From: Ascidiella aspersa
Taxonomy: Eukaryota
NCBI GenBank assembly: GCA_963924565.1
Contig: OZ004612.1
Span: 14,570,001 to 14,634,000, forward strand
Direction of reading: 5' to 3'
Length of the DNA: 64,000 nt
Notes under the pieces: generated by a model
Told to the model about the DNA's origin: nothing
The model's database searches: none
What the model saw: only the letters and a program-made list of their open reading frames with translations
Shown: one piece after another, positions 10,601 through 34,600 of the stretch
Position numbering within the stretch: position 1 is the stretch's first letter
Layout of the letters: every line of letters begins with the position of its first letter
Position numbers and translations under genes: made by a program

Positions 10601-13600
10601 TATCACCTTTGTTTTTACTTAGCCCAGCTACTGCAAGAATAGGACGTTACTTAATATTTTTTGTTTACAGAAATTTAATTGAAAACAAAATTTCATGGAT
10701 TCCGCCTGATCTTTTCTCGGGAACAAATATCTCGTTTTTGTGAGTTTACCTGAACTTAACAACTAAGTAGACAATTTGCCTAAACTAAACAACTAAGTAG
10801 CCAATTCTGCAAGAATTATCCTTTCAAATAAAATCTATGTCGAAATTATTTGCAGCACGGTTTACTTCGTACGGCTGATAAAAAAAAATCGAAAACATCT
10901 AAAGTAAAGTTTTTAATGTCAGGCTAAATGTTTTTCCTAGAACTTTTAAGCCATGAATTATTTTAATTGTTACTTTTTCCAGTTTTCATATTATTCTAAC
11001 AAAAATGTTGTTGTTCTCAGAGCTTTGAGTTCAAATGAAATCGGGCCGGTCATTCCATTGCGGACTTTTTTCGATATGCCTAACCTTCGATATTTGTAGG
11101 TATTTTTTTGACAGTTGGTTTTATACCACTGATTTTCAGCTATATTGCAATAAACTTGCTTATTTTTTATCGACTTGATCGTCGCTGTAATCAAATTTTG
11201 TCAATAGATTAAACTATTTTGTAATTTTGTCTTTTTTCTATGATTTAATTAGTGTATCTACCTAGGTCGTTCGATGGTAACAACTTGACTGAATTATCGA
11301 AGTATTCTTTGCAGCAATTTCCGACTTTGATACATTTGTAAGTATAGGATTTGTATAACACATACATTATCCCAAACAGTAAATAAAACAGTGGCAATTC
11401 CACGGGTTATTTTTTTCTAAATACACCTAATTTGGGAGCTTTTTTTTTAAATAGTCCTATAGGCATTTGTAATATGTCTAGTTCGTCGGTTTACTTGTCA
11501 AAACCAAGCAAAATGTATTATTATTTTTTCCATTATTAATTATAACTAATACCGATTACGTTTTAGATTAATCAAATTTATTACATTTAATACTGCCTGC
11601 TTTAGTGTAGGCCTACTCCACGTACTGAATTTACAAAACGAACTTTTGTTGTTTGTATGTTGTAAAATAACACAGCCATGTTTAAATAGAAACCTCAGCA
11701 ATAATGAAATATCCCAGGTCCAGGCCAACGCTTTTCAAGGAATTAAACAGCTAAAAATTATGTAAGTTTTCTTTAAAATATATAGTTGTTACTTTAGGTT
11801 ATATCTTCCCCTAAATATTGCATTTACGTATTATTATGGTATGTGATTACATCAATTTTGGATTCGTTTATTTTGGTTTCCGAATAAAAAAACTTCAAAT
11901 CATAAACAGAACCTATTTTATAGAGATATTGAGTATTACATATTTAGGTGAACGTTAAGTGGCATTTCATTCATCTTGGAAGTGTAAAATAATATGTCCT
12001 ATGGTATAGATGTCCGTATTAATACCAAAAACAGGGAAAGATACACAATAATATTATTGTAAGAAATCGAACACCTGTCTAAAACTGCGCTAATTTTATG
12101 GTAAATTTTATCTTAGTGAGTTACACGGAAACAAAATCGGTAGGCTTGGATCATGTGTTTTCAACAACCTCCCTGATCTTCTTCACATGTAAGTATACAT
12201 GTAAAAGTCGAGTTAAAACAGCTATATATAGAAAAACGTGTTCAAATCCTACCTACTTTATACAGCGATCTAAACCATAACGAAATGACTGAAGTGGTGG
12301 AAAAAACGTTTAGCAACCTTCCCAGTCTAAAAACGCTTCGTTTGCACAATCAGCAAATAACCCACATCCACCCACAGTCGCTGCATAACATAAATGCACT
12401 TGAAGAGATCTTTGTTAGCAGTAATCTTTTACCGCTATTTCCTCATCACGTATTTGAATATAAAATCTGGACTTCTTTGAGACACATGTAAGTTGGCAAA
12501 TGTATTTTCTATTAAACCTCAAAAAAATATAACAATATTGCTTGAGTACTAATAGCTATAAGGAATAAAATGTCTGCCAAATTCGAATGAACATTGACAC
12601 ATTTTTAAGTAATACCTATTTTCTTATAGACATGCGGACAATAACGCCATTCGTGGTTTAGTGGAGTATTCGGCAACCTCCGAGTACGGAATAAACTGGC
12701 AAAAATGGAGGCGACTAAACGAGACCTTTGAACCCTTTCGGAATTTATCAAGTCTCCAAACATTGTAATTTTCTCTACTAACGTATCTTATATCAGCTTA
12801 TTTAAACATACGTTTTATAGACGTATTAAATACATTTTTTTCTACTGAAGTTATATTTGTCGTCTTGCTTAATAATATCCGTGATGTGCGAAAATTATTT
12901 CTAGGTTTTTGCACAACAATCAAATTTCCAACTTGGAGGAGAATACCCTCTGCAACATCCCGGCCTTATATCATTTGTCGTTAGGGGGAAACCACTTGAC
13001 ATCATATTCGATCAACCCACACTTCTTCAAATGCGTTCCACAACTAGGTATACTCAACCTGGAGAGCAATAGGTAGCTGATCTTTTACCTAAAAGCTGGA
13101 AATCAAACAGACGAGTGTACATTCAATAAACCATAACACTGTTTCATTTTTAAGGTTTCAATTTATACCAGAAGCAATCGCTGACACAAACTTTCTAAAG
13201 GAGCTAACTATATTGTACCTTCAAAGGTCTGTCTGAATCAGGTTGCTTTTGAAAAACCCTGCTTATAATATTCACATTCTAAACTTTGTTAAAAAATAGA
13301 AACAAGTGTTTCTTGACTGATTTGTGTCATTAGGGGTCTATATAGCCTATCATTCAAGAAAACGTTCTAGCTCATATGGCCTGGGAAATCTCTCACTTTT
13401 GGGTTTTAACAGCTGACAGTGTCATCTAATGTCAATTTACTATAGGCCAATATGTGACATATGCTTTTAAATTCTCAAAAACCACAACAAATCTTTATGA
13501 AAGAAATTACGTTTTTAATTTACTTGTTATTGTAGGTTAACCTTCTGTTTAAAGAGTAACTGTAGAAGTAAAATCAACAACATTTTTACTTCACGAATAT

Positions 13601-16600
13601 GAGAGTCGTTTTCCATAAATATACTTAGTTTGTTTGAATTGATTTTTTGATATATTGCAATATTAAACCTCTCGCCCTGCTCTATATCAACGTCATCAAG
13701 GTTTTCTTGGCTTCAATATAAGTATATCTAAATATAGGAAATGCATTTCTATGCTCATTTCGACCCCAAGAACTTGTGTTTTGGTCCACATTTGTTTCAC
13801 AAGTATCTTTAAATGAAATATCATGTGCTTAGAAAAAATCCTTGTTGTTGTTGTAAAGCAGGAAACAAAACATCTTAGTTCGAATATTTTGATAAACAAA
13901 CGTAAATAAACTTATTATTCAGCTGTATAGTGTTACTTTATAGGTTTTCTTGTATGAACCTTTTCAATGTTAAATATCTTATTGAAGTAACCAGAAATTA
14001 TACAGTTATATAGTTTATATACCAAGCCTTTATATCTAATAATACGTAAGCCGTAAACATTGCTCACAAAACAGCTTCAGAAGGGCCAGCCCACAGTTGT
14101 TGAACACACACATGTGTGTATTTTTTATTTCTTTACATCCGAATTGACCTGTTTTCATAAAAGGCAGGGTTTTGAAAGAGTTAACCCGGCGGCCCGGATT
14201 TTGCCATATTTAGTGACCCCGGCTTAAGATGCAACAATAAATGAAGAACATTTTAATCATTAAACAATATATGCAGTGTAATCAAATGTTTTAAACAAGA
14301 TAATTTTGTGTCAAATCGAGGTATAGGTTTACCAAAGAAATTTAATTAACAAGTTATTTTGATTAGTACGTCAATATTCTTTTTTTGTAAATTCATCACA
14401 TTTTTTTAAGATTTTTGAAAATCTGAAACCATGGGTAACCAAGCCTGTTGAATTAATAGATAATCACCCTGTGAGCCACTTTTCCAATACAAAATTGTGG
14501 CTTTTCACAGGATTAGATTTTATTGAGAATATATATATACCCAAAAGACACAAATCAGTTACGAAACAGTTAATTGTTTAATTTTTTTTTAAATGTATTG
14601 TCTTTTAGTAACAAAATAGCCTTCATACGAGCAAAAGACTTCACAACGTTGATCAAATTACAACAGTTGTTCATTTACTCCAACAACATATACACTGTTG
14701 AAAATGGGGCTTTTCCGTCAAATTTAACGACGTTACATATGAGCGCGAACATGTTTAATTTTAAGGTATTTTGTTTTACATGACGAATAATATATTTTCT
14801 TTGAGATTCTGTGTATGTGTTTATCTATAACAGGATTGACCAACCTTTTCATCGCGCCGGTCGGAAACACGACCTTAATTCTTAAAAAAAATAAACCAGT
14901 GTTGCATATATTTAATTATTTGCTAAATTCAAAGTTTTTAGACGATTTACAAATTTGGATTTTCCAATTTTAAGAACATAAGTAGTATACAAATTCTGCA
15001 GCATTTTTTATGGGATTACTGTAGTTCAACAAGAAGCTTTTCAGCATGGGTGTCCAAGGTGTGCAGAATTTTTATGCTGCGAGCTCTTAATTTCCCCTTA
15101 AGGATCGACATCCTTTACGTTTCACAGCGACGCACAAAATGCTTTAAGTTGCCTGCCTTTCTGTGCGCATTTGTTGAAGTACAATAGATTTATCCTTTAC
15201 TGAAAATGATTTATAACAATTCATATTTTTTAGAGACAAGTGGGTCATAAAATATCTGTGGTGGTGGGTCACTTCGTCACCCGCGGTTCAGCGGTCCGCC
15301 ATCCCTGATCTATAAAAACGATTTTAAACATAAATACAAATAAAGGGTAAAGTGTTTTCCCATATTTTTAGCACAACACAAGCTTCAACAATCTGACTTT
15401 ACTTACGTCACTTTACCTTGACCATAATCGAATCGATCACTTGCCCAGAGATGCTTTTTGGGGTCTTGATCGTTTATCTCGACTAGGACTCCACAACAAC
15501 CGCATTCCGTTTCTTCCAAAGGAGTTTCTTCGCGACAGCACATCTGTATTATTTCTGTAAGAACCTCAACCATGATTTTATTTAATGCTGTACCTTGTCG
15601 GTGTATGCTGTACCTTGTCGGTGGTGAAAAAGATTCTCTATAATGTTTTACCTTAGAAATGTCCTGCCGTTTATTGGTAATGTATTACAGAAGGTCGTAA
15701 AAATTTAGTAAGGTTTAGTTACATCCCATATCTTTTTAATTGTGCATTTCATCCATTGTTTACGATCTGACTCTGCGTATGTTTTTCTGAAAGGTTTTTA
15801 TTTTAATACACAAACGTAACTAAGTCCCGACGATAATGCAAATGTTAACTTCAAAATTGTATTTTTCTCACTATGTTTTTGTCTTTATTATTATTTGTCT
15901 TGTTCTAGTTCTCTAAGTTCCAACGAGATAACATTCATTGAAGCAAGTGCACTGACAAGACATACTTGGAACGGAATATCAATACAATTGTCCCACAATT
16001 GGATAGTTCACTTTCCATCACAAAACGTAGGATAATGTATACGTAATGTTTATACTGATATAGTAACAAAATGTTAATTCTTTAAAATTAATTGTTGGTT
16101 TAAGATAAATTTGTTTTCTTTTCCTAGGTTGATGCGCTTTCAAACCGAACATTAACATATTTGCAGTTGAACTACAACCGAATTGAAAGAATACAGAGTT
16201 TCTCGTTTCGCAATATACAATTTTCACTATCTACAATTTCAATTTTCACAGGCCTGGACCTTTCAAACAGTAAAATATCAACGATTGAATCAAATGCGTT
16301 GACTTCAACTACTTCAGGTTATTAACATTGGTATTGAAAATTTTTCAACTCCTAAATTGTAAAAATTAAACCTAAATCGATAAATCTTTGCGCAACCCCG
16401 TGTTTACTAAACGCGTAAAGCATTTCTCGTTATAATAGTAAAGTTTAATGTAATTCGAATATGCTAGCAGGCATTTTTAAAAGCGAGATATTTAGATAAC
16501 AAACTAAAGAAAAGTCAGCCATTTATAAAAGAACTATGTTAAATAGTTGATTGGTAACCTACTACCTTATCGATATTAATTTTAGTTATTTAATTTTAAA

Positions 16601-19600
16601 AAATATGTTAATACAACAAATAGGTTTACGTATTACAAATATCTAAGTTCAATGTTCTGGTGTATTTATCTTTTTGTTAATAGAAAAGTGTTAGTTTTTT
16701 ATTTTTTTCGATATGATTAATGTGAAAGAGCCTCATCACTAAGTTTTGAAACGATACTGTTTTACAGGAATAATAAATCTCAATGGAAATGTGTTGAAGG
16801 ATATTCGCACAGAAGCGTTTGTTAACGTTGAGGCGACACATTTTTACATGCAAAACATTTTAGACGAGTCTCTACCGACGTGCCTTTTTCAAAGTTCTAC
16901 AGTTAATTATCTTTACATGAACTCAGGATTTATTACAAATCTAAGCCCAACGGTAATTTAGCATTATCAATGTTTTGAAGGCCAGCGAGTTTTGGTTTAT
17001 CTTAAATGTTTAACAGTTTGCACATTTTCTGTTTGTCAACAGGGAGGCGTAAATCCAAGAAAAGCGTTCAATTCGAGTTTATGCCAATATGAAGTTAACT
17101 GTTATTATAACTAAAGTTCATACGTAAAAATACTCGCCATCATGGAATATAAGTTCTCATAGAAAATTGATTTTTAATTTCACGGAATTTTAGATGGCAT
17201 CTTTACGTTTCCTATAAATGAGTTTTTGTTTTGTCATTTCATTGTTTGTAGCATCTATTGCTTTAAACATTTCATTACCGCCTTGTTAGCTTTAAATTGT
17301 TTGTTGGATTTTTGTTCTATACCAACAGGTTTTTTGCGCCATCACTGTATCCCAAACACTTCATTTGGAAAGTAACCAAATTACAGCAATTTCGTCGCCA
17401 CTCTTTAGCTACAGCAGCTATGTTTATCGTTTGAACTTGCAAGGCAACGCGATTACAGAACTATCGGAAACTGCATTTGACGGAGCTTCGATTACTATTT
17501 TACATCTGGAATATAACCAAATCGTAAAAAATTCATTTGCTAGTTTAATAATTTTTAATAGCGTCATGGTTCTTGTTTCGGTCTAAAATGAAATCATGAT
17601 ATTTTTCATGTTACTGTAGGTTTTTTCAAAACGTTAGCTTTATCTGGGCACCGTAACTAAATGTTATCTTAAATTTAGGATTTTATGAAACACTTGTAGT
17701 GCTATAAATAGACAGTCAAAAATGAATCTTTAAAATAGGCGGAACTTCCAGACGAACTGAAAGTCAATGGTCTTCAGAGGCTAAATTTAACCTCGAATCT
17801 CATTGTACGCTTAAGACCGGTAGGATATCCCTAGTTATTTAGTATACAACAATCCGCATATGATATAACGTATACCCTAATTTCACAGGGAGTTTTCAAC
17901 AATCTTACCAACTTACGATATCTATACATGGATAACAATCAAATAACCGTGCTCCGATCGGAATTGTTTGACAGTCAAAGTTCTTTAGAAATTTTGTCAT
18001 TTACAAATAACGACATTACGGTGCTTGAGACCGGATTTTTCAGGTGCAACAGGGGGCGTGGCCTTATTTTGCACAATGTGCGCAAAAATGTGCAAGCCAA
18101 AATGTGCAAAAAATGTGCGCACATTTTAAACTGTCTTCAAAAATGTGCGCACTTTTTCAACAATGTGCGCACATTTTGAACTGCCCGCAAAAATGTGCGC
18201 ACTTTTTTCAACAATGTGCTAAACTGCCCGCAAAAATGTGCGCACTTTTTTTTTTTTAGTTGGAGTTGGAGTTGGAGTTGGAGTTAGAGTTAGCTAAACT
18301 ATGTACTCTAAGTCTGACCCTAATTAATTCTAACTATAACCTAAAAATGTGGGCACATTTTGAAGGCATTTTAAAATGTGCGCACATTGTTGAAAAAGTG
18401 CACACATTGTTAAAAAAGTGCGCACATTTTTGAAGGCAGTTCAATATGTGCGTAATTGTTAAAGAAAAGTGCGCACATTTTTGAAGCCAATTTAAAATGT
18501 GCGCACATTGTGAAAAAAAGTGCGCACATTTTTAAAGGCGGTTCAAAATGTGCACACATTGTTAAAAAAGTGCGCACATTTTTGAAGACAGTTCAAAATG
18601 TGCGCACATTGTTAAAGAAAAGTGCGCACCTTTTTGAAGGCAGTTCAAAATGTGCGCACATTGTTGAAAAAGTGCACACATTGTTAAAAAAAGTGCGCAC
18701 ATTTTTGAAGGCAGTTCAATATGTGCGCACATTGTTAAAGAAAAGTGCGCAATTTTTTGAAGGCAGTTTAAAATGTGCGCACATTGTGAAAAAAGTGCGC
18801 ACATTTTTGAAGCTATTTTAAAATGTGCGCTCATTTTTTGCACATTTTGGCGTGCACATTTTTGCGCACATTGTGCAAAAAATGTTCGCATCCCCGTCTC
18901 TTCAGGTGGCTAACCATAATCTTTTATTATTATACTACAAAGTTTAATATCATTGAAATTTTAAATATACATAATATCATTTCTATGTAATGTTATTAAT
19001 TTAATTATTTATTTTCAAATTATTTCAAAGTAAGCGCATTTAATCTTACATAACCCCTTTTTTTCAGCTTATCTGGCTTTCAAGCTTTGCGCACACTGTA
19101 CCTTGGTGGAAATCAAATAAAGCACATACCGCACTTGGGAAATTTAGTGAACCTACGTTGGTTGTACTTGGACAGCAATCCTGATTTAAAGACCTTCGAG
19201 ATTGGATCCCTGGACAGCGTATCAAACGACTTTGCCACTCTAGGACTTAGTGGTGTCGAGCTTTCTTGCAAGTAAGTATATTTATCGCAGTGTTGCTTAA
19301 CCCTTTTCACTCAGGCGCACCTTGTATCCAGCGGGGAAAGTAGAATAATTTTATTTCCGGAACGATGAACAAATGTCAGAAGTGACGTCACAAAGTTCAT
19401 ACTAAGCATCTAACATAAGTAACCAAATGAAACCAGAGGTTATCGTTTAATGTATTACATAAATATCAGTTTAAACACATTCAAAGAGATGGCGGAATAG
19501 CTTGGCGTAAAAAAAGACATTCAAAATTTCTTTAAGAAAACGCTGTTCCGAACCCTTCTAGCCTACAAACACCATGCTGTGTGTATCTCCAAAAATTGAT

Positions 19601-22600
19601 AGAACAACTGGTGTGCTATTGAAGCGAGCGCGGGATTTAGTGGCCTCCAGGGTCATTTTATGTCAATTCACCAGGCCATAGAAACCATGGTTTTGAAATG
19701 CTTAAAATTGTTTCAATTTTTTAAGAACAAGCCTTTTTGAAAAAAATTGACTTATTAATTTTTCTGAAACTCGGACGTATGACGTTTTTCGTAATCCACT
19801 TTTTCGTTAATTAAAGTGTAACTGAAACATATAACTTTATTTCTTGTCCAAGAATGGCATTTTATTAAAATGGAAACGTCATTTTTCTCAAAAACTGTAA
19901 TTTTAAGAAATCTGACAGTGATGTAATGACTTGAGTCATTTTTTGACAAAAGTGCACTAAAGTCGCTGTTTTTAAATTACTTGACTTGACTTAATTTGTT
20001 CGACCAAAATGACTTTACTTGAGTCTTTTGGACAAATAACTTGACTTGGACTTAAGTCATTTCGTCGAATAACTTTGGATTAAATTAAGTGTTTTTGTTT
20101 AGAATTTATCTCGAATTTTTGCGCATTAAACACTTTTCGTGTTTCGTTAATGTTATTTTTAATTGATTTATTACCCAAGTTTACCAATTTTAAAAGCTTG
20201 GATTTGACTTGGACAACCTATATGCCTTGGTGTGGGACTTGACTTGTTATGTTTTCAAAAGACTTGACTTGGACTTCTTGGACTTAAGTTATATTTCAAA
20301 TGACTTGACTTGGACTTATTGCAAGTCATTTCAAAATGTTTGTTTACAACACTGGAGTCTGAAACCATGTGTTATGGCCTTGTAATATGAGAATATCTCT
20401 TCCCTTGGGGAATTAATAAATATATATATATATATTTATTTTCTACTTATGTGTTATCGTTTTGTTATGTTTGACAACTTATTAGAGCCGTTTTAACATA
20501 AGGCTTTAAAAAAACACCTTAAATTTCAGCTGTGATATGATCAACACGCTTTATCCAGTGGAGCAAGCAATCGTAGGTGGAAAATGTGAACAGCAAGGTG
20601 TCAGTCTCTCATCGCTTAAAATGACTATAAATGTCACAGAAAATCTATTTTTGTGCAGGTGATTTTTAAGTTGTTTTTTATTTCAACAGAAACATTAATT
20701 TAAAACAAAAATCCTTGATCCGGCAGTGCTTTTTATGTTTTAAATTAAAATTTAAACACTTTTAAAGAACCAAGATATATTTCGATAAACAAAAGGGTTG
20801 TTGATTTGGAACTTTTGCTAGAGTCTGATTGTACGTTTCTCCGTTCAGTGGTGAAAATTACAGCGCCTACGTAACAAAGGATAAAGAGTTGTCTCTAACT
20901 TGGTCACAACCAAGCAATCTCTTCTACCAATTATCCAACACATCAGGTGATTGGACCGTGGAACCCGTTTTAGAGCCGGTATCACTGGAGCAGGGCGTTG
21001 ACTGCTCATGCAGGTAAATTAGACGTAGAACAGCTCTTTGTACAAAACTAAAAGTGTGATTAATCGCAGGCTTTTATCTTGAAGCTATATCGTTTTCATT
21101 TGGTATAAAACAATATCATAAAAATAAAATTATAGTTTCACAACAGATAAGTGTTTGAAAGTTGTTACTAATTGTGGAGTTGTTAATATGTAATACTGTG
21201 TTGCATAGAATTTTTTTGTGAGACTTTTATGACGTATTCCTGTCCGAGTATAAGCGCGACTCTCCCAGTACCGGTAGTAGGTTATTTATTGCTTGTAATA
21301 GGTGCACTGCCAGTAAATACTACACTAATCAACACTAAAACGATAAATAATGTAATTATGTTTGAAATGTTAATTGTATATTCACGTTGAAAACATATTA
21401 ATAAAATACAGAGAGCTTGTGGCAAATTCATCTATAATCAACTCTACTGCACTACTCAACGAGACTGCGACAAACGGAACATTCTTCACGAACGCTAACA
21501 TGGACTGTTTGAATTCAACCACATCAACAGAAAACGCCACCAATCCAAGTAGTTGTTACGTTAAACTTATTGTTTAGCTAATAAAGGAACTATCAAAGCT
21601 TATAAAGTGTCAAAATATAAAAAGGTTTACAATATTTTATAGATTGTTCAGCTGCATTTAATGAAACAGTTGTCGTATGCGGCACCCACTGGAGTACTTC
21701 TCAAGAATGCATCGACGAAATGATGTAAGTAATCTTAGTCATAAAAATAGTATCGTTGTACAATGTTTTAACTAAATTCATTCATAGTAAAAAGAGCATA
21801 CCTCATAAATAATTTTATCGCAAATTAGTGAGTCATCAATGTTTTATTTACAATGTCATAAATACTTAATCTTCGTATATGGCCGTATGTGTCTAATTCT
21901 AAATAGAGGAATCAGGTGGCACTGTATAAAGACAAATTGTATTTGTTTCTCGACAAGCTTTGCACAACCGTGCTTCATCAGGTCAAAGTATAAATGAAAA
22001 CAATTGAAATGCACGTAAAAGCACAAGCGCAAGTAAAAGGCGATAAGAATGGTGATGTCTAACATATCCACAGGCACATGTTCGCAAAAGCGTGTTACTG
22101 ACGCAAAAACAATTATACTACGAGGCCTGCGCTTCAAGGTACGATGGGTGTAGTACAGCCTGCTATGAGGTGTAGTGTGACATAAAGCCCAAATCCCGAA
22201 GTCCGACATTGATGGCATCGAACTTTTTAATTATGTTTTGTTCGACTGTCGCCTGCGGCACACTAAAAATATCAAAATTAATTCAAGGCACACTTTTTAC
22301 AAAATATCACAATAATAACTTAACAATCCGAGCAACTTTTTAATCTCTCCAGCACACAGTTTTAATCACTGAACTAACCTATTAAATAATTTAACAAATA
22401 AAAAGCTCATTTGTTTGTTTTGCAATGAATAGTAGTATTATTCAAATGGCCTTCTATATAACAAAGTAACCGGTAAATACCTTATTAGTTTTATCTAATT
22501 ATAATGGGTATAGGTGAAGTCTTGAGTGCATTGCCGGCATATTAGTAATACAAATAGTGATTTTTAGCAAAATCACACTAATTCAGTCGCAAACTTAACA

Positions 22601-25600
22601 ATCTCTCGCAACACACTATAGTGTACCGCGGCACACAGTTAACCAATCACTGCTGTTCAGTGTACACTATTAGGCAAAATATGCACGTATCATTGTTGGT
22701 AACAAGGCGTTTTGAAATGATTTAGGTCGAAGTCAAGTCTTCTGCCAAAAATGTACCAGTATAAGTCATCAGTTGACAAGGTCAATTCCCGGTCAAGTCA
22801 TTATAAGAGAAAGTCAACTTCAAGCCAAGTCATTGATATAAAGTTATGACGTTGAACTAATAAAATGAATAAACTCGTACGATTATGAGCAGTAAACATG
22901 ACTAAAATTAACAAAAACGCAATATAGGCCTACAGCAAAGTCCATGTAAAGCTATTTTTTAAAAAGTATCAACTTAAGTAAGTTAAGTCATTTTGGTCAA
23001 AAGACTTGAGTCAAGTCAACTCATTTAAAAACAGTGACTTATATCCACTCAAGTAATCTCATTGACTAAAAACATTTCAACACTGAAAAAGTACTGTACT
23101 GAACAATATGTTCCGATTTATAAGAAATGCCCTTTTTTAAAATATTACTATCGATAACGGCTCACATATCACCATTAGTAGAGTGGGAATAATTTAGCAA
23201 CAACAATAGACTGGTGCCTTATCGTAGGAATTTACTGGCCAATGTAAATATCGCAGATCTTACAGTGTCAAGTGCTCATCAGAAGGTTCGTCGTTTACTT
23301 ACAACGTTACAAACACGACACTTCTTATTAAAGAGCCTCAACCGGGGTCAACTTACCAATGCACAGTTAGTCTTTTGTATAACAATACTGAAAGCTCACC
23401 AACAGCTATTATATGGCTACAAGTTCCTGAACTCGAACTAGGTTAGTACAGATTAAACTTAAATTCATTATTAAAAAATAGGTGTTTTAGTCGCTAGTTG
23501 ATGTATTTCTAGTTTCGATCCGAAGCTGCGATAATAATTAAATGCGATACGCTAAAACTTGATAAAATCTACCTTAACGATAATTCGGTAAACCTCGGTT
23601 CAGTTTTTGGCAAATAGTAATTCATTTTTCCTTCGTACTAAAATTTATCAAACTATTAAATCGTTTTAAATTAATAAAAATCGATAATTTTTTATACCTG
23701 GCCCGCAATCGTAAATGCTAACAGTTATTTGCCTCGCGATGGTCAGGCCTTACATTTATCTAGCTAATTATGAAAAAAGATTAGTTATCCCTGCACTAAT
23801 ATACTATTAACTTATTTTATTAGTGAAAACAGCACATTTTAATAACTTAATTTGCATTCAGCTGAATCGTGTAACAACACGAAATTGTGGAAATTGCCGG
23901 TTACCTATTATGATTTTAGTAAGCTACATCCAGATTTTGGAAATAACCCAGTTACAAGTCCTTCGTCCTTTTTCTACATAGCCAGGTGTTTATATGTGGT
24001 TTGCTGTTTGCGATGATCGTTTGCTTAACTATTATTTTACGAAACATGTTAAATTGCCTATAAACTTTTAGCCCTGTAACTGTTTGGTTGGCCGACCTTG
24101 ACAATCCGAACAACACTGGATTTCAGGATTGGTTCCGGAATGTTTCTGGAATAAACTTTGTCTACCAAGAGCTGTTGTACCTAAAATCCTGTGAAGACAA
24201 TGGTTCATATAGGTTTGTGCAGTCTCACAATTAACAAATAAAGTACTCTAGTTTAAAAAATGAAATCATTTACCAGGTGTTACCAAAATGCTGACCTAAT
24301 AGCTATTGAGTTCTTATACACTTGTCGCAGAAAACGCTTGTTTATATTGGCAACAGCCGTCAATTATAGGCTACTAACTTTATATGCTAAGTGTTATGAT
24401 TCATTTTTTAACTGAACGTTTATCTTACAGCAATAATAAATAAATTAAAATTCTTCTAATAATATAGATACTTTAACTCCACGTACTATCCATTGGATTT
24501 CGTTGGTTACCAGCATGAATCCCAAAGAAACTGCAGCGATGAGTTACACAACATGGGGTAGGTTATATTGCAATATACACAAGTTTTAGTAGTTCCAAAA
24601 ACAATCCCAAACTAAAAAATTCAATTTCACGTAAAATCTGTGTGAAACGTCAACTACAGATTTTGTGTGATACAACAACTAACACTTTTTTTGAGAGAGA
24701 AATAAAACAACGGCAAAAAAGATAATATGTTACAGATTTACAAGTGCAATTAGGACGGCATTCACTTACGAAGGACCAATGGCAATAACTTTGGGGGGTG
24801 GCGAATACATGTTTCTTTTTATCGGCACTAAGTTGGTCGCGACATACGCCAGCAGTGGGAACAATCTTATAACTGAATGTGTCATGTTAAACGTTGGCCT
24901 CAACGAGCGCGGTAAATACGTTGCATTTATTTTTTATTATCATTTTTTAATAGCCGTAAATGTAATACGTAGTTTGTTACACTCCTAAAGGTTTATTGAA
25001 AGTCGAGAGAAGTTTTGGGAACATAAGGAATCAAACATGCGTCACTGAAAGCAGTGAATTTATCAGTTTTGATCTAGAACTACAGGTAAAACTAATCTCT
25101 TTTGGAAGATTTAGCAAATGTATATCCGATAAGATATTGATATATGTATAAAGATATCGTTGGGGAACAGTGCTTTAAATGGGTACACATATGTTGTTGG
25201 AAACAATTCGATGTGGAAATATGGATAAATGAACATTAATTGTAATTATTTGATACCCGTACCATAAAAATAAATTAGATAAAGTATAAGTTGCATAATT
25301 GTAATTATTTGTGATTACATATAGATAGGCGACGTTTATCAATTTGACTTGTTTCATGTTGAGCGAGATTCTTGCTCGTCTGAGTTTCTATTTGAAACAC
25401 TAAATGTACAGTTTTCAGAGGAATTTTTAAACGAAAGTACTGAAATCATCTCAGGTGAAATTGTTTTATACTTTTTATTTTCAATACTAATAATATTAAA
25501 AAAATGCTGCTTTTTAGGGACGGATTCAGCTGTAACATCAACGGCCATCCCACTAGAGACAACCACTACTAATGTCGTTGCGACTACCGTAACAAATGGT

Positions 25601-28600
25601 TCAACAACCAGTTTGCCACCAAACGACACAAATATCGGTCTGACAAGTGTTTGACATGTATAAAGCCGCATTTGATTACCTTAACGGAAATCGATATGTT
25701 AATGTTAGCCTGTTCTTGAACAATTCGTTATTATTTGTAAAATTCAATAAGATAGAAACGGTTGTAGAATCGTGTTAACACGGTGGTTTTAAAAAATTTG
25801 TTCCTTTTACCTAAATGTATATAAAAACGCTCAAAATATAACTGCATATTATACAAAAAGTAGCGAACGGAATTTAGAAAACGTGTTACGTGTGACTTGT
25901 GGTATTTTACATCAGTATGACTTGCAGGCAATTAAAGCGTTACACTATTAAACAAAAAATTGGAATTAATCACGAATTTTGAATGTAATACATCCTTTTT
26001 TGATGAAACTTATCATTCATCATGCTTTTACTAACCTATACCTCGCTGCAAATAATACATAGGATTTTTTAAATGTCAACCACGAAAAAGTCAGTGCACT
26101 ATAGTCAAAATTGTTTTCAGGAGAATCAGTTTAAATATAATAAAATTTTCGTTTTGGCTGCAACTTAAGATTTCTATTTTCTTTCCATATATAGCCAGCA
26201 TTGTGTGTCTATACTATTCACACTAAATTATTACATACTGTATGTCTGCAATCGCGACGTAAAGTTTCACTACCACTGTATTAACCCAAACAAGCAAACG
26301 CTTTTCTTGGCCAACTTAAATTGTTTCTTATTTTTATATATTGTTTTAGGTGAAACGAATGCGGTTCCTTTAATATTGGCAGAACCACACATAGATTTGT
26401 TTTTAACGCTTCCGGAAAATATGGAAGTTGGAAGTTACGTTGTTACATTTGGACTTGGAAGAAAAAATGGGTGAGTTTTAAAAAATATATTTTTGTTGCC
26501 ATTAATTCGCAACGACATAATAGAAAAAAATTAAGGCAATACAAATAGGTATTTACTAGGCGGTAATTAGCATCAAAATTTTATTCAAACTATTTTAAAA
26601 AGGGCAAGCACGTATGCTTTATAAAGAATAGTAATGAAAGTCTTTCAGTTACTGGTCATACTTGTTAACAAGGAAAATTTGGTTGTCTGGTCTCAACAGA
26701 TCATTCAGGGTCGAAATGTCGGACGAAAACGGAGCTGGGGATTTCTTTCAACTTACAGCAGAAAACAGAGCAAACCTCACAAACCGTTCTTTTTTTGCAT
26801 TGCAAGGAAATCAACGAACTATCAGCAATCAGACTTTCTTAGATTGCTCTTCACTGTCTGGTACGCCACCTTGTCAACGTCTTATTTTAAAAAATAATAT
26901 TTTTTATTTTTCCTTAAAACACCCTTGGATTACAATGTTGTCCTATAGAGCTTTTTATTGTTTTTCATTCATGTTGTTAATAAAAGTAATATCGTTTATA
27001 TTGCTTTTAGTTCGGTTTTGTTTTTAATAGATTTTGGCACAACGGTACCACCTCCTGTAGGAACAGTTGTTTACACTAACGACTCTCTCTGCCATGTTTT
27101 TCTCAGAAGTCGTCTAGACTTCGAAACAACACAGTTTCACCTGCTTAATATCACGGTAGAGGTGAGACAAAGCTCTTACGACCTAAAATTATCTGCAAAG
27201 CATCTAAAATTGTTTGTATTTCACAAGTTTTAGTTCAAATTAAATAAGAATATTTAAAAAAAATATTATTTAAGGAGGTCTTATATTTAAATAGCAACAA
27301 AGTTTTGGTTTGTTTCAAATGTTAATCCTGTTTGGTAGGACATTTTGTTGAACCAAACAAACTTTCTAATAATTAAAATCAATGTTGGGGATACAAATGA
27401 CAATTGTCCTGAAGTGAACGCTTCTTTGGTAAATATAACTCTTTTGAATCCCTCACTTTCTACGCACGTTCCAATGTTTGCGCTGAGTGCAGTTGACGTC
27501 GACAGCTTTGACAACTCTCTTATAAATTACGTCCACAGTGAACCAAGCGTTAGGTAAGTAATACGGCATATTTTGTTAAAACATATTAATGCTTTAGCTG
27601 TTTATAGGTTGCAATCCAATGTTTACTAAAATGCTCAGCTAATAAATAAAAGTAGGATTTGGCCTACCACAAAAAAAACTTTTTCTACACTTCCAACTGT
27701 AGTGACTTACTTAACCTAATACTAAACCCACGTATCTCAGGATTTTATTTGGGCAATAATGCGGCTAATTAAAAGTTTCAACAAAACAAGCAAAACGTAT
27801 TTAAATTGCTTGATGTTAGTGTTATTATCGCTTTTTGTTAGCTTTAAACGAAAGTTCCGCCTATGTGTAACATACGTTGTTTAGCGGAGCAAAAGATCCC
27901 CAATTTTTTATGTTATAGACAAAAACTTGAAAGGTCCAGCATTCTTTGTTTTGAAGTCGTAGCATATGACTCTGGGAGTCCAATACTGGGAAGATCTTTA
28001 TCAATCAACATTGAGGTTTATTTGACATGAATATTTTGACGTTTATGTAGCTTAAATGTTATCTTACTAATTTAATCCGTTTTGAATATTGTTAATCTTT
28101 AATAATCACTTTGCAATTTTGAGTTAAATCAACCACTTAATTTAGAAAAGCCTGATTTTAAACTTTAACAAGACGATTGTTCTAGTAACTATACTTTTCT
28201 CATGTCTCCACTTGGATCTTCCATAAGTTCAGATTAGCCGATGCCGATACCAAGTGGTATTTTTGCTACAGGTCCGATAGTAATGTTGTATCGGTACCAA
28301 TCAAATACCAGAGTAATACTAGAATTTCAGTCATGGTTTGTAATCCCACCCACCGACCCTACCGTTTAAGGAGATTTAACGAAAAGACAAATATTGACCT
28401 AAGATCGGAAAATGGTAGTAATGACGTAATTTGGTATACGATAGGGTCGTGAAACTTTTTACAAAATATCGGCTTTCGGTATCGCAATAAATTGTCAACT
28501 ATCGGACATCCATATATTTCCCACCATTTTTTTTTATTTCAATTGTTTTCTATAGATATCGGATACTTGTCTTTATGATTCTTTTGGGCATCAGTTGAAT

Positions 28601-31600
28601 TATTTCATTGAGTTAGAGTCAAAAAATAATAGTGGCACAGCAAAATTCTTTCTACGCCTTCCAACGAGATACGCCTTAACGTATGGTAAGTTTATTACAA
28701 TAACATTTAGACTTATAAAAACGTTACCTAATGACCTTCGGTACTGATACTAATAAAGCAGCGCGGTTCTCTATAATACAGTTGTTTAGAAAAAAACATA
28801 CATTTAAAACTGAAATAACGACAAATGAATGCGAACGCGAATTGTCAATTACCACAAAGGATTTGTGAAAAACATTCAGTTTACTAACGCTGTCTAACCT
28901 TTCAATATCTAATGGCCAGGTTATAAAGAATGTGTCAGGATCTCATTGTATAAACAAACAGTGTCTAAGTTTGATTGACGAATTTATAAGACGTAAAACG
29001 CCTAATGCGGATTGTGTAGTCGACCCTTGGCAACGCCTTGTCCTAGTTGATAAAGTATAAGCACTATTTCCTACCGTTTTTTATGTGCTGTTGTCGTTCG
29101 AATTTATTATTCCCATATAGCATGTCTGTTAAATACTAATAACCCACTTACAATCAATTAAAAAAGAAAGTTTTAGTTGCTATTTGTCTTTTGTAGATTG
29201 TACCCTGCCAGTTGGAATTGAAAGTGGCACAATCGGCAACTCGGCTATAAGAGTGTCGTCTGTGAGGGATACCGGCGAATGTGGTCATGTGTATCACGGA
29301 CACTTCGCCAGGCTCAATCGGGAATCGACATTTGACAAACACGGATTTCTTTTGGTCGGTGCTTGGGTGGCGGAAGACAACGATACGATGCCTTGGATTG
29401 AGGTGCCTTAGATTTTGTCTAAATTGTTTTTCAGGGCGACCTTTTTTTAAAGATCGGTCACTTTTCGATTGTTTGATATAAATAGTAACTTCTCTGTGTT
29501 TTCCTGATTTTAGTTTTTGCTAAAGAACGTTGGTTAGTACGTTCTGTTTCAACTGAGTTTCAGAAATTTCCATGGTAGGAATAAAACACAGTTCGTAGTA
29601 AGTTCAAAATAGGACTAAAATCTAATAGTCAGAATATGGTCAAAGTCAAAAAAAAAATACCTATACCCATCGGAATAACACCTAATTGGCCAGAATAAGT
29701 TCTAAAGAACCTCTTACCTAAAACCTCAAAAGTCACCCCTAAATCGTAACTAAGTTCAATTCAGGACGCCCAAACGCCCATACTAAAACGGCCGATGCCA
29801 GCCCGATGGACGCCCCATATCCTCGCCAGACTGTTTTTTTAAAGAGTTATTCAGGCCAATTAGGTCTTGTTTCGACGATTTTTAACTTATTTCCACAGGA
29901 TTAGACCTTATACCAACAATATACGGCTTTATTTCGTCGTAGATGTTGCTGCGTGTTTTTCAATTTTAAGTATTGTTGTTTTCTAGGCTCTATTGTGTGT
30001 TTTCTTTTTATCATTATACTTCTGACAATTGAATACCTGCAGAAAATTGACTTTAGGTGGCTATATCACTGCTTATAGGAAGTGAATATGGTCAATTATG
30101 ATGCGTTTGATTCGTGATCTAATCAGGATACGTTATTTATTTGGCCCGTGGTCAAATCTTGATAAATGAATTTGACGCATTGGAATAAAAGGTTCCACAT
30201 CTTTTTTAGAACAATTCCGTTGAAAGACCAATTGCAGCATTGATAGACAAGATACATATTGATGTATTCTGTCATGACCTAGTTAATAAAGCACCACCTA
30301 GCACAACTAATTCAATATATCAGCAACTGTCAAAATTTTCGCAAACGTTTTTTATAGTAAAAAAACACGAAGCTATTAATGGCTTCTTGGCAGCAATTGC
30401 AGTGGTCAGGTTGTAAAATATACTTACACAAATTGTTGTTTATAGGTATCCCTTGAAGAGAGTACAAGCCTTACATCCATAGCTACGCAAGGGTTTGAAG
30501 ATTTCAACTTCTGGCTAACTCACTATTACGTAACATTCAGCAATGATGGAGTTAATTGGCTAATTTACATTCCACAAAATTCAATGGCGATAAATGGTAA
30601 TTATATGAGAAATATTGTTGAACAGATATTTTGCACACGCTTCGCGCAAATCTTTTTGTAATGTCTTACAATGATTTTTGGAAGAACTTAGCCCAAAAGC
30701 GCCGTGCGCAAACGGCATTCTAAAGAATTTTCCTATACAAATCATGTTTCATCCTGGCAAAAATATTTTTGTCTGTTTTTTTACATATAACATAAAACCG
30801 TGAGTATGACGGGTGTATTAAAATTAAATTTAATTTTGCGTTGACTTGGACTCTCTCCAAATTAATATTTCTGTCAAACTATATTATTTTTAGCAAAAGC
30901 TACAAAATTATCCTAAAATACGCAATTACATATAACAATGTGCGAACCGTTTTTGTGCGTCTTCTGCTGTATTAAAGTTATTGTCGAATAAGCCTTAACG
31001 AGGTCACGGTATAGAAACATCCTGAAACAGCCCAGCTCCTGTTTGTTGTCCGCCTAAAACTCGCGAGGAACATCGTGACCCCTGAAGAGTTTCAGACATA
31101 ACGCCAAAACAATTAAAGCAAAATTTACGACTTTTCTTGAGGAAATGGTGTGATTTGCGATTATAGCTTACCAAACTGACTCCAAATAAAGTGGATTAGA
31201 GATGACCAAGCGTGTGTATTTTAATAAAGTAAACACTATATTTACTGATTCAGGCCGGGTCAAGTGATGGTGCTAACTTTTGTGATATAAAGACATATTT
31301 TTGCCTTTCCCGCAAATTTCTGTTCACTTCTACTGTGTTTTTTTTTCCGCTTTTAGAAAGACTATTCGGCGCGCTATTAAAACCATTGATTTACAGGACC
31401 CTAATTCAGGCAAAAATTATTACTAAAACAGTTTTCGTGTTAATTTAAATAGCTCCTTCGACACTAACTTCGTCAAATAATCTGTCAATATAGTCCGAGC
31501 TATATGAATACGTTTTGCATTTTGGAGTATATTATATAGCCATTAAATCACTATTTTTCGTCTGTCGACAGACACAGGTTGTTCTTCACCGAATACCGAA

Positions 31601-34600
31601 GAGTTTGAGTCGATTTACTCAGCATCGTCAAGTGGCGAAAGTGTCAATCTCTGTCTTAAACATCAGAATAACGTTACTGGGGATATCGGAAATTTGTCGT
31701 ACGTTATTCGGGGAAATGACGATGCAAACTCGACGGTAAAGGTGGACTTCAACCCGACGTTTATTGCAAAATACGTGAGGTTGTATCCGATTGCTTGGCA
31801 CAGCGGGATCGGGATGCGTCTGGAGTTGTTCGGTTGTGTTGAATCAAGACGATTAACAGGTTATTAAATGTAGCACTATATACAACAAATTATGGTGCTC
31901 ACAATCAAGTCTAGGTCAAGTGATTAGCGAAATAAAACAATAAATTATTAAAACTGTTAAACCTAGCAGATACTGAGCGATATTTTGATTGGCAAAACCA
32001 AACTTTTTTACCAGCAAAATATCGGCGAAACAATAACCAAAAATTACCAACAAACTATTTTAAAATATTTAAATATAAGGTAATTTGTTTGCCTGAAAAA
32101 CTTTCATTTGAATGTGTATTAAATAAAAAATCGCCAGTGGAGAGCAAATGCTACCCGTGTCCGACAACGTACTACTGTCCTGGTGACGGAACGATGCTTC
32201 CATGCGGAAGGTGTCCTACGGATGACAACTCAACTAGTTTAGATCCAGCCGATTGTGGAAGAAGCTCTACCGAGCACAGCTTTGGGGCGGCCGAAGCTTG
32301 CGAAGCTTGTCCGCTCGGTTATGTGAGTTTTTAGATTCTAGCACTATACTGGGCGAAATACTATTTCAACTCAATTTATTGTGTTAGCAAACTGAATGGT
32401 GTTCTATACTCATAAAATGGTTTTGTATGGAGTCGATTTCTAACGGTAAATAACTTCTTGCTAAAATACTATCAGTGCGTTAAATTTACAAACTGTATTT
32501 TAGTGCTGTTGAATATACACTTTGTTTTAGTTATTTACTTTCATAAAAGAATATTTTTTAGGCAAATTTTTGTTATGTTAATTGGTGTTATTGCAAAAAA
32601 ATGGAATATAACTGCGAAGTCATACAACATTTTATATACTAACATGCTTCATTGCGTTAGACTATAAATCTACAACTGTTCGCCGCCGCTTGGGTAAATC
32701 GCTATTTTTGCGTTGACGCAGACTTGTAAGAATGGGTTAGCAACCCGCTGTCCGAAATTTACTTTCACCGAAGTTTGCAATGCAACTGAGTGTTCAGCTT
32801 GTACGCCGTGCGAAGCGGGTCATTCCTGCTTGGTTGGTGTGATGACGTCATGCCAACCAGGAAGGTTTTCTGAAGACGGTCAAACAGGTAACTTCCTTTT
32901 TGTAACAAAAAAAAAACGCTATCCAGCAGAAAACAAAGTATGCATCGTTGCCGCAATATTATTAATATCTGAGTTATAAAACGAATTTTCTTTCGAATAA
33001 CAGAATCTGCTTAAATCTGGATGGTGAAACAAACGATTCTGGTTGCACATCAATGATAAAGATTAAACTAAATATAGAACTTGGTAAACCGAAAATCGGT
33101 TTGTTTAGATGTTGATTCATTCGAATTAAGATACTGATGATGCTTTTAACAGCGAAACAAATGCATCATAATTAACTCATATCAAAACAATTTTTTTTTT
33201 GATAAAATGAAAGATAAATTTCAAAATAACCGAACGACCAATTTCAAAAAGCTGACTTTAGTTTTTTTTTAATTTTTTAAGCGATTTATGTGCAATTTTA
33301 TTCAATTTTAACTTACAAAAATATTGACAAATTTTGACCTAACGTGTAAATTTTGACAAAATTTTGACTTTTTTTGACAAGTCAAAAAATATTCGCCCTA
33401 ATCATAATATAACAACTAAACAAACTGATTTTCGGTTTACTAACTTCTGTACTTAGTTTAATCTTTATCTGAGTTATATTGTATAAAATATTATTTTGCC
33501 TAGGAGATTTGGTAAATGAACAAACATGTTATATTTCGTTATATATTACTCAATATGATCATAGTATATTACACAGTTAAAAAGAACAATAAATCGAAAG
33601 GGTAAGAAAAATACGTAACGTGTACTGTAAAAATGAATTCGATAAGATGCGTTATTATGATAGACGTTAATCGTTAAAACTTGCACAACTTACAAGCATT
33701 GACGTCTATCATAATAATGTACCTTTTACAGATTACTGTTTTCCATGCCCTAGTGGAACTTTCACCAACATTTCCTCATCAACTGCGTGTAGCCCCTGCG
33801 CGTCGGGTAATTATGATTTCAACATATTGTTTATAAGATAGCAAGTGACTTGTACATATCGCGCTTTTACTTTCGAAGGTTACCAAAGCACACCTGGTTC
33901 AATGCAGTGTTTTCCTTGCATGAATCAGGAATGGTCTAAGGCTGGTAGCGCATTTTGTGAACCGTGTTTCGACGAATGTACGTATATTTTCCAATTAATA
34001 TTATATGTTTAATCGTTCACCCGGTTGTGTATAAAAACGAGCATTAATTCGGTGGTTTTACAGGCAAGTGTAAGCATCCTTCTTCTCCGTGCTTCCAAGA
34101 CGTGGAGTGCATCAATATTTTCGATGTTAATTCCACTTTCCATTTCATGTGCCTCGACTGTCCCAGAGGATTTACTGGTGACGGGGTTAACTGCACAGAC
34201 GAGGACGAGGTAAACAAAAAATATTTTCAAACTGTTAATTATAGGCCTATGTGTTTTTTTTTAAGATTTTCGGGTGCGTGATATTTATATTATAGTTTTC
34301 CATTCTCGTGACTAAAGTTTTTAGTGAACTATACTTGTCGCATAATTCTGAATCTATAAATTCAAGTCAATCTCTGCAATAGATATAATCCTACCAAAAG
34401 AGAGGTAAAAGGGGATTTGAACCAACCATATTCATAACGTTTTAACTAAACTATAATAATTTTTTTGTGGACAACCGTTAGATAATTTAATTTAATTTAA
34501 GAAAAGTTATTTTAAAATTCTGTTTTAGTGTGCCTCTTCAACCAATCCATGCTTCAGTAAGGAACTGTGTGTCAACACATATGGCGGTTTTCACTGTGAA

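What the first reader, a model, noticed from the sequence alone, without database searches (positions are those of the whole stretch)
23862..25454. Fibro-slime (Dictyostelium Psi / bacterial PA14-type) domain embedded in an animal mega-thrombospondin
Seen: six phase-compatible exons, mostly missed by the ORF track, splice into [12 protein letters not shown] / [12 protein letters not shown] / YYPLD..GY / HNMGFT...FTYEG / LFIGTKLV / [18 protein letters not shown]. Knowledge: this ordered motif series is the fibro-slime signature (RDF..HPDF, F.QW+.D..G+N, FFP+D..GF, HNF.FT...F.Y.G, GDDD+WVFIN.KL, G..Y.+D+F.AER...SNF.I.T), known from Fibrobacter and myxobacterial proteins and Dictyostelium secreted Psi factors. 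I do not recall it being listed in the mega-TSP architecture. Inference: a glycan-binding or signalling module, acquired by ancient horizontal transfer or retained from a pre-metazoan ancestor and now fully intronised, sits between the LRR solenoid and the cadherin stalk.
Basis: partly seen in the sequence, partly recalled or inferred. Interest (0 to 1): 0.88.

Follow-up and report, generated by a model that had tools for sequence, protein, structure and literature searches.

The report
Fibro-slime PA14 domain in sea-squirt mega-thrombospondin
Six small exons of a giant sea-squirt matrix gene (a mega-thrombospondin) encode a lectin-like PA14 domain of the "fibro-slime" type. The domain proved to be a standard, old and mostly unannotated part of this protein family from corals to chordates, not a special acquisition of this animal.

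Summary
Exons at 23862-23985, 24072-24212, 24468-24557, 24736-24911, 24991-25085 and 25325-25454 (+ strand) all have AG/GT borders. They map in order onto a ~245-residue block found in all 49 full-length animal mega-thrombospondins (mega-TSPs) I collected.

The block is a PA14-superfamily domain of the fibro-slime subtype:
- TIGR02148 matches 21 of 21 orthologues tested, best 51 bits against a cut-off of 45.
- A profile of the animal block finds bacterial fibro-slime proteins at E 1e-27 to 1e-44, and those pass Pfam PA14.
- An AlphaFold model of a coral orthologue is closest to solved PA14 lectin domains.

The host gene (about 7.6-45.3 kb) is a mega-TSP.

The novelty claim is only partly right. 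Shoemark et al. 2019 already list a PA14 domain in Hydra mega-TSP. What goes beyond that paper is that the domain is found in every sampled cnidarian and bilaterian mega-TSP, although Pfam misses it.

Recent gene transfer is excluded. Three introns share position and phase with a coral-like contig, and a second paralogue in this genome has the same exon layout.

Function (probably glycan or matrix-ligand binding) is inferred. This copy has lost half of the acidic pair.

The parts
23862..23985 (+). Exon 1 of the domain. It encodes '...[16 protein letters not shown]...' (in-frame codons 23864-23983) and ends 2 bases into a codon.
   Evidence: AG/GT borders read. Profile positions 23-60, E 8.6e-6 among 1505 window frames. 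blastp to P0145, P0014 and P0012 at the matching place.
24072..24212 (+). Exon 2. It encodes '(S)[28 protein letters not shown]...' (codons 24073-24210).
   Evidence: Profile 61-112, E 1.3e-8. The split codon AG|C gives the conserved S of 'SPY'.
24468..24557 (+). Exon 3. It encodes '(R)[29 protein letters not shown](G)' (codons 24469-24555) and contains the first family-specific cysteine.
   Evidence: Profile 109-140, E 2.8e-10. The phase-2 intron inside the G codon of HN.G|FT is shared with a coral-like contig.
24736..24911 (+). Exon 4. It encodes '[34 protein letters not shown]...ECVML...' (codons 24737-24910): the core strands, the degraded acidic pair (E-Y) and the second cysteine.
   Evidence: Profile 139-193, E 9e-14. 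TIGR02148 positions 4-72 at 15.6 bits in the own-genome scan (locus L003). Translation.
24991..25085 (+). Exon 5. It encodes '(G)[31 protein letters not shown]' (codons 24993-25085): the mega-TSP-specific insert with the third cysteine.
   Evidence: The score is weak (3.6 bits, profile 204-233), but the exon is in the right place and order. It is flanked by introns whose position and phase match the coral-like contig. The conserved G and C are kept.
25325..25454 (+). Exon 6. It encodes '[30 protein letters not shown]...' (codons 25325-25453) with the fourth cysteine; it is the end of the domain.
   Evidence: TIGR02148 positions 63-86 of 90, E 0.041. Profile 233-268, E 1.2e-9.
25518..25637 (+). 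Probable next exon: a Ser/Thr-rich linker ('[24 protein letters not shown]...') between the domain and the first cadherin-like repeat.
   Evidence: Reading of the sequence and the open frame. Borders are inferred and not tested.
7606..45270 (+). Host gene, a mega-thrombospondin. Order of parts: LRR exons at about 10.5-19.3 kb, an FN3/Ig-like part at about 20.5-23.4 kb, this domain, cadherin-like at about 26.3-28 kb, discoidin at about 29-32 kb, Cys-rich and EGF at about 32-35 kb, TSP type 3 at about 35.5-38.3 kb, TSP_C at about 38.5-40.3 kb, and a second ConA-like domain up to about 45.3 kb.
Evidence: Open frames. Pfam hits on ten exon frames. The TSP-C exon retrieves mega-TSPs.

Best explanation
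The six exons encode one extracellular beta-sandwich domain of about 245 residues. It belongs to the PA14 superfamily, fibro-slime subtype, and is an ancestral, constant module of mega-thrombospondins. It sits between the N-terminal LRR region (plus an FN3/Ig-like module) and the cadherin repeats.

Shown here: its identity, its conservation, its fold class and its age. It was already present, with three of its introns, before cnidarians and bilaterians split.

Inferred: like other PA14 modules, it most likely acts as a glycan- or matrix-ligand-binding site that adds one more lectin-like surface to this multi-domain matrix protein. Compared with bacterial fibro-slime domains, the animal version differs in three ways. 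It has four family-specific cysteines. It has a ~45-residue inserted hairpin. It has GGG(D/E)E in place of GDDD.

The copy in this window keeps the cysteines but reads GGGEY, so classical binding through an acidic pair is doubtful for it. It is the more diverged of two paralogues in this genome.
For: 1. Exons and chance test.
2. TIGR02148 Fibro_Slime matches:
   - E6 at E 0.041 and E4 at 15.6 bits.
   - Full-length orthologues P0011, P0014 and P0077 at E 4.8e-9, 3.3e-10 and 1.5e-8, at the matching residues.
   - 16 of 16 further mega-TSPs at E <= 0.001, best 4.6e-11.
   - Coral transcripts at 44.1 and 51.0 bits against a cut-off of 45.
3. Reciprocal test: the mega-TSP profile hits 80 of 81 bacterial DDDxWVFIN open frames, the best 20 or so at E 1e-27 to 1e-44 over profile 26-178 and 220-258. 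Seven of these pass Pfam PA14.
4. Fold: AlphaFold2 model of the coral orthologue domain, pLDDT 81.5 and pTM 0.82. The best structural matches are PA14 domains: Cea1A Z 8.8, RTX-adhesin PA14 8.2, the KmBglI residue range (406-556) that I take to be its PA14 insert 7.8, MpIBP PA14 7.1, Epa6A 6.9, Flo5A 6.3. Foldseek gives probability 0.97-0.99 for Epa1A and the Marinomonas primoryensis PA14 domain.
5. Language-model features: nearest clusters are bacterial PA14 families at 0.89.
6. Constancy: all 49 animal mega-TSPs in hand carry the block. Their taxa, named, are Cnidaria, Echinodermata, Hemichordata, Cephalochordata, Mollusca and Annelida.
7. Age: three introns have the same position and phase in a coral-like contig. 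A paralogue at G000:C6:10.064-10.071 Mb has the same six-exon layout and a TSP_C about 16 kb downstream.
8. Conserved residues and cysteines.
Against:
- The six exons were never scored as one protein. Each alone is far below the TIGR02148 cut-off.
- Pfam PA14 does not match any mega-TSP directly.
- Structural Z-scores of 7-9 are in the range the tool calls middling.
- The fold model is of a coral orthologue (about 35-40% identical), not of this protein.
- Ligand binding is pure inference. The second acidic residue, the conserved W and the conserved N of the core motif are changed here (E-Y, F, G).
- The copy scores lower than its paralogue (about 165 against 221 summed bits), which fits relaxed constraint.
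Confidence: 0.8

Rival explanations
1. The window's copy is a decaying or functionally released paralogue. The domain is recognisable, but it no longer binds a ligand and may serve only as a spacer, or the gene may be on its way to becoming a pseudogene.
For: - It scores below its paralogue on five of six exons, for example E4 45.8 against 60.5 bits and E3 30.9 against 50.5 bits.
- It has changes at positions that are at least 90% conserved: P56F, S70L, D131N, E155M, W166F. The core reads [11 protein letters not shown] against the consensus GGGEELWLYIN.
- Earlier unchecked notes report a broken first exon and a foldback transposon on a splice donor in the same gene.
Against: - All six exons are open with canonical splice sites.
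- All four family-specific cysteines and about 30 of 38 highly conserved positions are kept.
- Downstream TSP_3, TSP_C and Laminin_G_3 exon frames are intact and score well.
Confidence: 0.15
2. The domain entered the animal lineage by horizontal transfer from bacteria (for example Myxococcota or Fibrobacterota) at or before the origin of mega-TSPs, rather than by vertical descent from a unicellular eukaryotic ancestor.
For: - The closest non-animal relatives reachable here are bacterial: Myxococcota, Planctomycetota and Fibrobacterota.
- Myxobacteria also carry TSP type 3 repeat proteins, which match the same animal proteins (NF047638).
Against: - No eukaryotic outgroups could be sampled, so the apparent bacterial affinity may only reflect what the tools reach.
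- By the title of Kolbinger et al. 2005 (cited in PMC6889452), Dictyostelium has an extracellular PA14-domain protein, so a eukaryotic route is open.
- Any transfer would predate the cnidarian-bilaterian ancestor.
Confidence: 0.3
3. The motif series is a chance resemblance, or bacterial contamination, in non-coding or mis-assembled DNA.
For: Each exon alone gives no Pfam hit and only weak NCBIfam hits.
Against: - Five frames are significant and collinear out of 1505.
- The block is interrupted by spliceosomal introns shared with a coral-like contig.
- It is embedded in a 38-kb animal gene.
- A second copy lies 4.5 Mb away on the same contig.
Confidence: 0.01

Closest known systems
PA14 domain of Hydra magnipapillata mega-TSP (Shoemark et al. 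2019, PMC6526912)
   Same: Same protein family and the same central region. That paper lists a beta-barrel PA14 domain (IPR011658) there.
   Different: The paper reports it for Hydra only and does not treat it as a family feature. Here the block is found in all 49 sampled mega-TSPs, and Pfam PA14 fails on those tested. The Hydra sequence itself was not examined here.
Bacterial fibro-slime domain proteins (TIGR02148; Fibrobacter, Myxococcota, Planctomycetota)
   Same: Ordered motifs are shared: RDF..HPDF, F.QW, FFP.DG.GF, HNF.FT...F.Y.G...WVFIN.KL, Y.FD.F.AER. Reciprocal profile hits reach E 1e-27 to 1e-44. The Fibrobacter proteins are described as cellulose-binding surface proteins (abstract of PMC4668043).
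   Different: The animal version has four extra conserved cysteines, a ~45-residue insert after the WV.IN strand, and GGG(D/E)E instead of GDDD. Most animal copies score just under the TIGR02148 cut-off. The context is a eukaryotic matrix protein rather than a bacterial surface protein.
PA14 lectin and adhesin domains with solved structures (Cea1A, Epa1/6A, Flo5A, M. primoryensis and RTX-adhesin PA14, KmBglI insert)
   Same: These are the best structural matches to the model of the orthologue domain, with Z 6.3-8.8 over 124-163 aligned residues.
   Different: Sequence identity is 8-14% and there is no direct Pfam PA14 hit. From my own knowledge, those lectins hold calcium and sugar with an Asp-Asp pair. 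Mega-TSPs have (D/E)-E at the position aligned with the bacterial D-D, and this copy has E-Y. The structural equivalence of that position was not checked.
Ciona intestinalis mega-TSP (CiMT, XP_002121519, formerly TSP-DD)
   Same: It is the published tunicate member of the family at 3,020 aa. The best named match of the window's TSP-C exon is a Ciona savignyi TSP C-terminal fragment at 53% identity.
   Different: The Ciona protein could not be retrieved, so orthology to either of the two paralogues found here is untested.
Dictyostelium secreted PA14-domain proteins (Psi factor family)
   Same: Extracellular, cysteine-rich, PA14-bearing proteins. One mediates quorum sensing, going by the title of Kolbinger et al. 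2005 as cited in PMC6889452.

Membership tests
Mega-thrombospondin (Shoemark et al. 2019) | Extensive N-terminal leucine-rich repeats | tested here: met
   LRR_8 hits on exon frames 15372-15557 and 17296-17583. Many further LRR-like frames lie at 10.5-19.3 kb.
Mega-thrombospondin (Shoemark et al. 2019) | Central region with one or more cadherin domains | tested here: inconclusive
   Frame 27339-27554 has a cadherin-like 'DTNDNCP' signature but gave no Pfam hit. Orthologues have PF00028 right after the block.
Mega-thrombospondin (Shoemark et al. 2019) | Canonical TSP C-terminal region: EGF, type 3 repeats, TSP_C | tested here: met
   EGF_CA, TSP_3 (twice) and TSP_C (77.1 bits) on window exon frames in the right order.
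Mega-thrombospondin (Shoemark et al. 2019) | [quoted passage not shown] | tested here: met
   Laminin_G_3 on frame 44938-45270.
Mega-thrombospondin (Shoemark et al. 2019) | Very large size (typically over 2,700 aa) and a signal peptide | not tested
   The spliced model was not assembled (joined step left out). An earlier unchecked note gives about 3,000 aa and another queries the first exon.
Fibro-slime domain (NCBIfam TIGR02148) | Score at or above the curated cut-off of 45 bits | tested here: inconclusive
   Window exons alone score 14.3 bits (E6) and 15.6 bits (E4); the joined protein was not scored. Orthologues score 51.0 and 44.1 bits and 40.3, 36.6 and 35.0 bits. 16 of 16 have E <= 0.001.
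Fibro-slime domain (NCBIfam TIGR02148) | Ordered motif series shared with bacterial members over the whole domain | tested here: met
   The animal-block profile aligns to bacterial members over profile 26-178 and 220-258 at E down to 1e-44. The window exons carry the same motifs.
PA14 domain (Pfam PF07691) | Pfam gathering score | tested here: not met
   No PF07691 hit on the window exons, on three full-length orthologues or on two coral domains at E up to 10. No precomputed Pfam list of any retrieved mega-TSP holds it. Bacterial intermediates do pass it.
PA14 domain (Pfam PF07691) | PA14-type beta-sandwich fold | tested here: met
   This was tested on a coral orthologue's model, not on this protein. 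The top structural matches are PA14 domains at Z 8.8-6.3, and Foldseek gives probability 0.97-0.99.
Calcium-dependent PA14 lectins (Flo/Epa type) | Adjacent Asp-Asp pair for calcium and sugar binding | tested here: not met
   At the columns aligned with the bacterial D-D, mega-TSPs have D/E in 43 of 43 sequences and then E/D in 37 of 43. The window has E-Y and its paralogue has D-I. Equivalence to the lectins' pair is inferred from sequence only.

The most novel reading that the evidence does not exclude
A fibro-slime-type PA14 module, reinforced by family-specific cysteines, is a universal founding component of mega-thrombospondins, possibly of all animal phyla that have them. Standard annotation has missed it because Pfam PA14 does not reach it. 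One of the oldest animal matrix proteins would then carry a ligand-binding module otherwise typical of surface and signalling proteins of aggregative or substrate-attached microbes (myxobacteria, Fibrobacter, Dictyostelium). A more speculative rider: in cellulose-making tunicates, one of the two diverged copies may have been retuned towards tunic polysaccharide.
Probability: 0.45. Interest if true: 0.5.

Novelty: new member of a known kind. Interest (0 to 1): 0.4.

Why it matters
Mega-thrombospondins are among the few matrix proteins traced to the base of animals, and knock-down of the Hydra member blocks head regeneration (abstract of PMC6526912). Their central region has been described as variable. 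Showing that about 245 residues of it are a constant PA14/fibro-slime module gives three things:
- a concrete, testable ligand-binding site;
- a corrected domain map for the whole family;
- a profile that annotation pipelines could use.

It does not overturn anything. The domain class was already seen in Hydra, and the family was already known in tunicates.

Tried and rejected
- Per-exon Pfam scan: nothing. Per-exon NCBIfam scan: only E6, weakly.
- Own-genome hit L001 for TIGR02148 is noise under the animal profile. L004 is a different PA14 gene.
- PDB sequence search with P0009: the domain region was drowned by TSP, discoidin and cadherin hits.
- The search for homologous proteins on the domain of P0009 and P0260: only 2 and 26 hits, all mega-TSPs. 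No sponge, ctenophore, placozoan, tunicate or non-animal protein came up. That says little, because the search needs shared words and has a length window.
- The supplements of the 2019 paper hold no sequences of the central region. PMC1151990 is not held.
For that reason no tree including this copy was built, and the fold is that of an orthologue.
- A bacteria-versus-animal tree without other eukaryotes was judged uninformative for the transfer question and was not run.
- Rejected readings: chance motifs or contamination, and recent horizontal transfer (see rivals).
Full report
**1. What is in the sequence.**

The window is AT-rich (34.6% G+C) animal DNA. Earlier notes of the scan call the genome a probable ascidian. 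That fits the best named match of one of its exons, a Ciona savignyi fragment.

Between 23862 and 25454 I read six + strand exons with canonical AG/GT borders:
- E1 23862-23985
- E2 24072-24212
- E3 24468-24557
- E4 24736-24911
- E5 24991-25085
- E6 25325-25454

The phases are compatible. The split codons read S, R, G and G, and the first three restore residues that are conserved in orthologues. Its assignment of motifs to exons is slightly off, and it overlooked what the fifth exon encodes.

**2. Is it more than chance?**

Each was searched alone and by reference.

- Alone they are too short for the curated libraries. Pfam gives nothing. NCBIfam gives only E6 against TIGR02148 Fibro_Slime (E 0.041, profile 63-86 of 90). 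The own-genome scan gives E4 against profile 4-72 at 15.6 bits.
- I therefore collected orthologues. A search with the TSP-C exon and two region searches gave about 50 full-length mega-TSPs. They come from anthozoan and scyphozoan cnidarians, echinoderms, hemichordates, amphioxus, molluscs and an annelid (names).
- The six exon translations map in order on one block at about residues 1120-1365 of these proteins.
- A profile of that block was scored against all 1505 open frames of the window. It picks exactly the frames of E1, E2, E3, E4 and E6 (E 8.6e-6 to 9e-14), in collinear order. E5 is weak but in the right gap.

**3. What the block is.**

- All 21 orthologue sequences tested hit TIGR02148 at the matching place: three, two coral transcripts (44.1 and 51.0 bits, cut-off 45) and 16 of 16.
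- Pfam PA14 does not hit them. No precomputed Pfam list of any retrieved mega-TSP holds PF07691.
- For a reciprocal test I fetched bacterial loci carrying DDDxWVFIN. They are mostly Myxococcota, Fibrobacterota and Planctomycetota.
- The animal-block profile finds 80 of 81 of their open frames, the best 20 or so at E 1e-27 to 1e-44. The hits cover far more than the selecting motif: profile 26-178 and 220-258.
- Seven of those bacterial proteins pass Pfam PA14 over the same stretch. This gives a transitive link to PA14.
- Two intronless coral transcripts from a metatranscriptome (L005, L006) provided a domain-only reference. An AlphaFold2 model of it, built with 40 aligned sequences, has pLDDT 81.5 and pTM 0.82.
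- The best structural neighbours of that model among 48,161 chains are PA14 domains: Cea1A Z 8.8; RTX-adhesin PA14 8.2; the KmBglI residue range 406-556, which I take to be its PA14 insert, 7.8; MpIBP PA14 7.1; Epa6A 6.9; Flo5A 6.3. The second-ranked row (6qe7, Z 8.3) and the xylosidase row (2xvg, Z 7.1) are not labelled PA14 in the output.
- These Z values are middling by the tool's own warning. Most of the named top rows, however, are PA14 domains. Foldseek agrees, and so do language-model features.

Conclusion: a PA14-superfamily domain of the fibro-slime subtype.

**4. The host gene.**

Open frames and Pfam hits along the window give this order: LRRs, an FN3/Ig-like part, this domain, a Ser/Thr linker, cadherin-like repeats, discoidin, Cys-rich and EGF modules, TSP type 3 repeats, TSP_C, and a second ConA-like domain. 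That is the mega-TSP architecture of Shoemark et al. 2019. That paper lists a Ciona member.

**5. Age and origin.**

- All 49 animal mega-TSPs in hand have the block. The bacterial type 3 repeat proteins retrieved alongside them do not.
- In a coral-like genomic contig (L015) the block is also split. Three introns coincide with the ascidian ones in both position and phase: phase 2 inside the G codon of HN.G|FT, phase 1 in the G codon before the insert, and phase 0 before (V/I)G..Y.
- The ascidian genome has a second mega-TSP 4.5 Mb away on the same contig (G000:C6, about 10.049-10.071 Mb, minus strand). It has the same six-exon layout, and its own TSP_C exons lie about 16 kb downstream. That paralogue is closer to the family consensus.
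- The module was therefore already an intron-bearing part of the gene in the cnidarian-bilaterian ancestor. A recent transfer is excluded.
- Whether the ultimate source was a bacterium or a unicellular eukaryotic ancestor cannot be decided. I could reach no amoebozoan, choanoflagellate, sponge, ctenophore or placozoan sequence.

**6. How it probably works.**

Shown:
- the fold class;
- four cysteines that are conserved in 42 or 43 of 43 animal sequences and absent from the bacterial ones;
- a ~45-residue insert carrying two of those cysteines;
- an acidic pair (D/E)-(E/D) where the bacterial domains have D-D.

Inferred: by analogy with PA14 lectins and adhesins, and with the cellulose-binding fibro-slime proteins of Fibrobacter (abstract of PMC4668043), the module is most likely a glycan- or matrix-ligand-binding site. 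The four cysteines probably form disulfides that stiffen it.

In this copy the pair reads E-Y, and the conserved W and N of the following strand are F and G. Classical acidic-pair binding is therefore doubtful here. The copy may be under relaxed constraint.

**7. Novelty.**

That is the only paper in the library that uses the family name. What I did not find described there:
- the module is constant across cnidarian and bilaterian mega-TSPs;
- it is of the fibro-slime subtype;
- it has animal-specific cysteines and an insert;
- it shares introns between a coral and an ascidian.

This is a useful annotation correction and a modest evolutionary point, not a new kind of system.

**8. Limits.**

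- The joined exon model was not built, scored, folded or placed in a tree.
- The fold is that of an orthologue.
- Function is inferred.

Noticed in passing
G000:C6:10049197-10070750 (minus strand; loci L143, L002, L142): There is a second mega-TSP paralogue 4.5 Mb from the window on the same contig. It has the same six-exon fibro-slime block and is closer to the family consensus (core 'GGGDIMWLYVN'). Its own TSP_C exons lie about 16 kb downstream.
   Followed up: partly
G000:C1:34255267-34259348 (+) and G000:C7:6317239-6320447 (-): Two further TSP_C-bearing genes in this genome, probably canonical thrombospondins.
   Followed up: no
G000:C5:5840647-5840790 (-), locus L004: One exon hits Pfam PA14 directly (39.6 bits). 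It is not of the mega-TSP type under the animal profile, so it belongs to a different PA14-bearing gene.
   Followed up: no
window 47300-62300, mostly minus strand: Several copies of the same pair of open frames recur at about 47.6, 54.7, 59.3 and 60.5 kb (for example '...NGSYEERSYPAANWVSTT...' and '...EELNH.LFYWPGV.LDMTIPVTVEMDA...'). This is a tandemly repeated gene family or repeat element downstream of the mega-TSP gene.
   Followed up: no
window 18030-18990: A block of repeated 'KCAHI/KSAHIF'-type open frames follows directly on an LRR exon.
   Followed up: no
L015:8010-11458 and L010-L014 (coral-like metagenome contigs): Genomic copies of a coral mega-TSP domain. Their introns fall at profile positions about 39, 140, 200, 233 and 289. 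Three are shared with the ascidian; the one at 39 is coral-specific, while the ascidian has its own at about 60 and 110.
   Followed up: yes
L040:2119-5514, L047:789-2657, L053:1316-3211, L031:3-4052: In Myxococcota the fibro-slime/PA14 domains follow arrays of DUF4215 Cys-rich repeats. One Pseudomonadota protein combines the domain with PKD repeats and a Sde0182-type cellulose-binding C-terminal domain.
   Followed up: no
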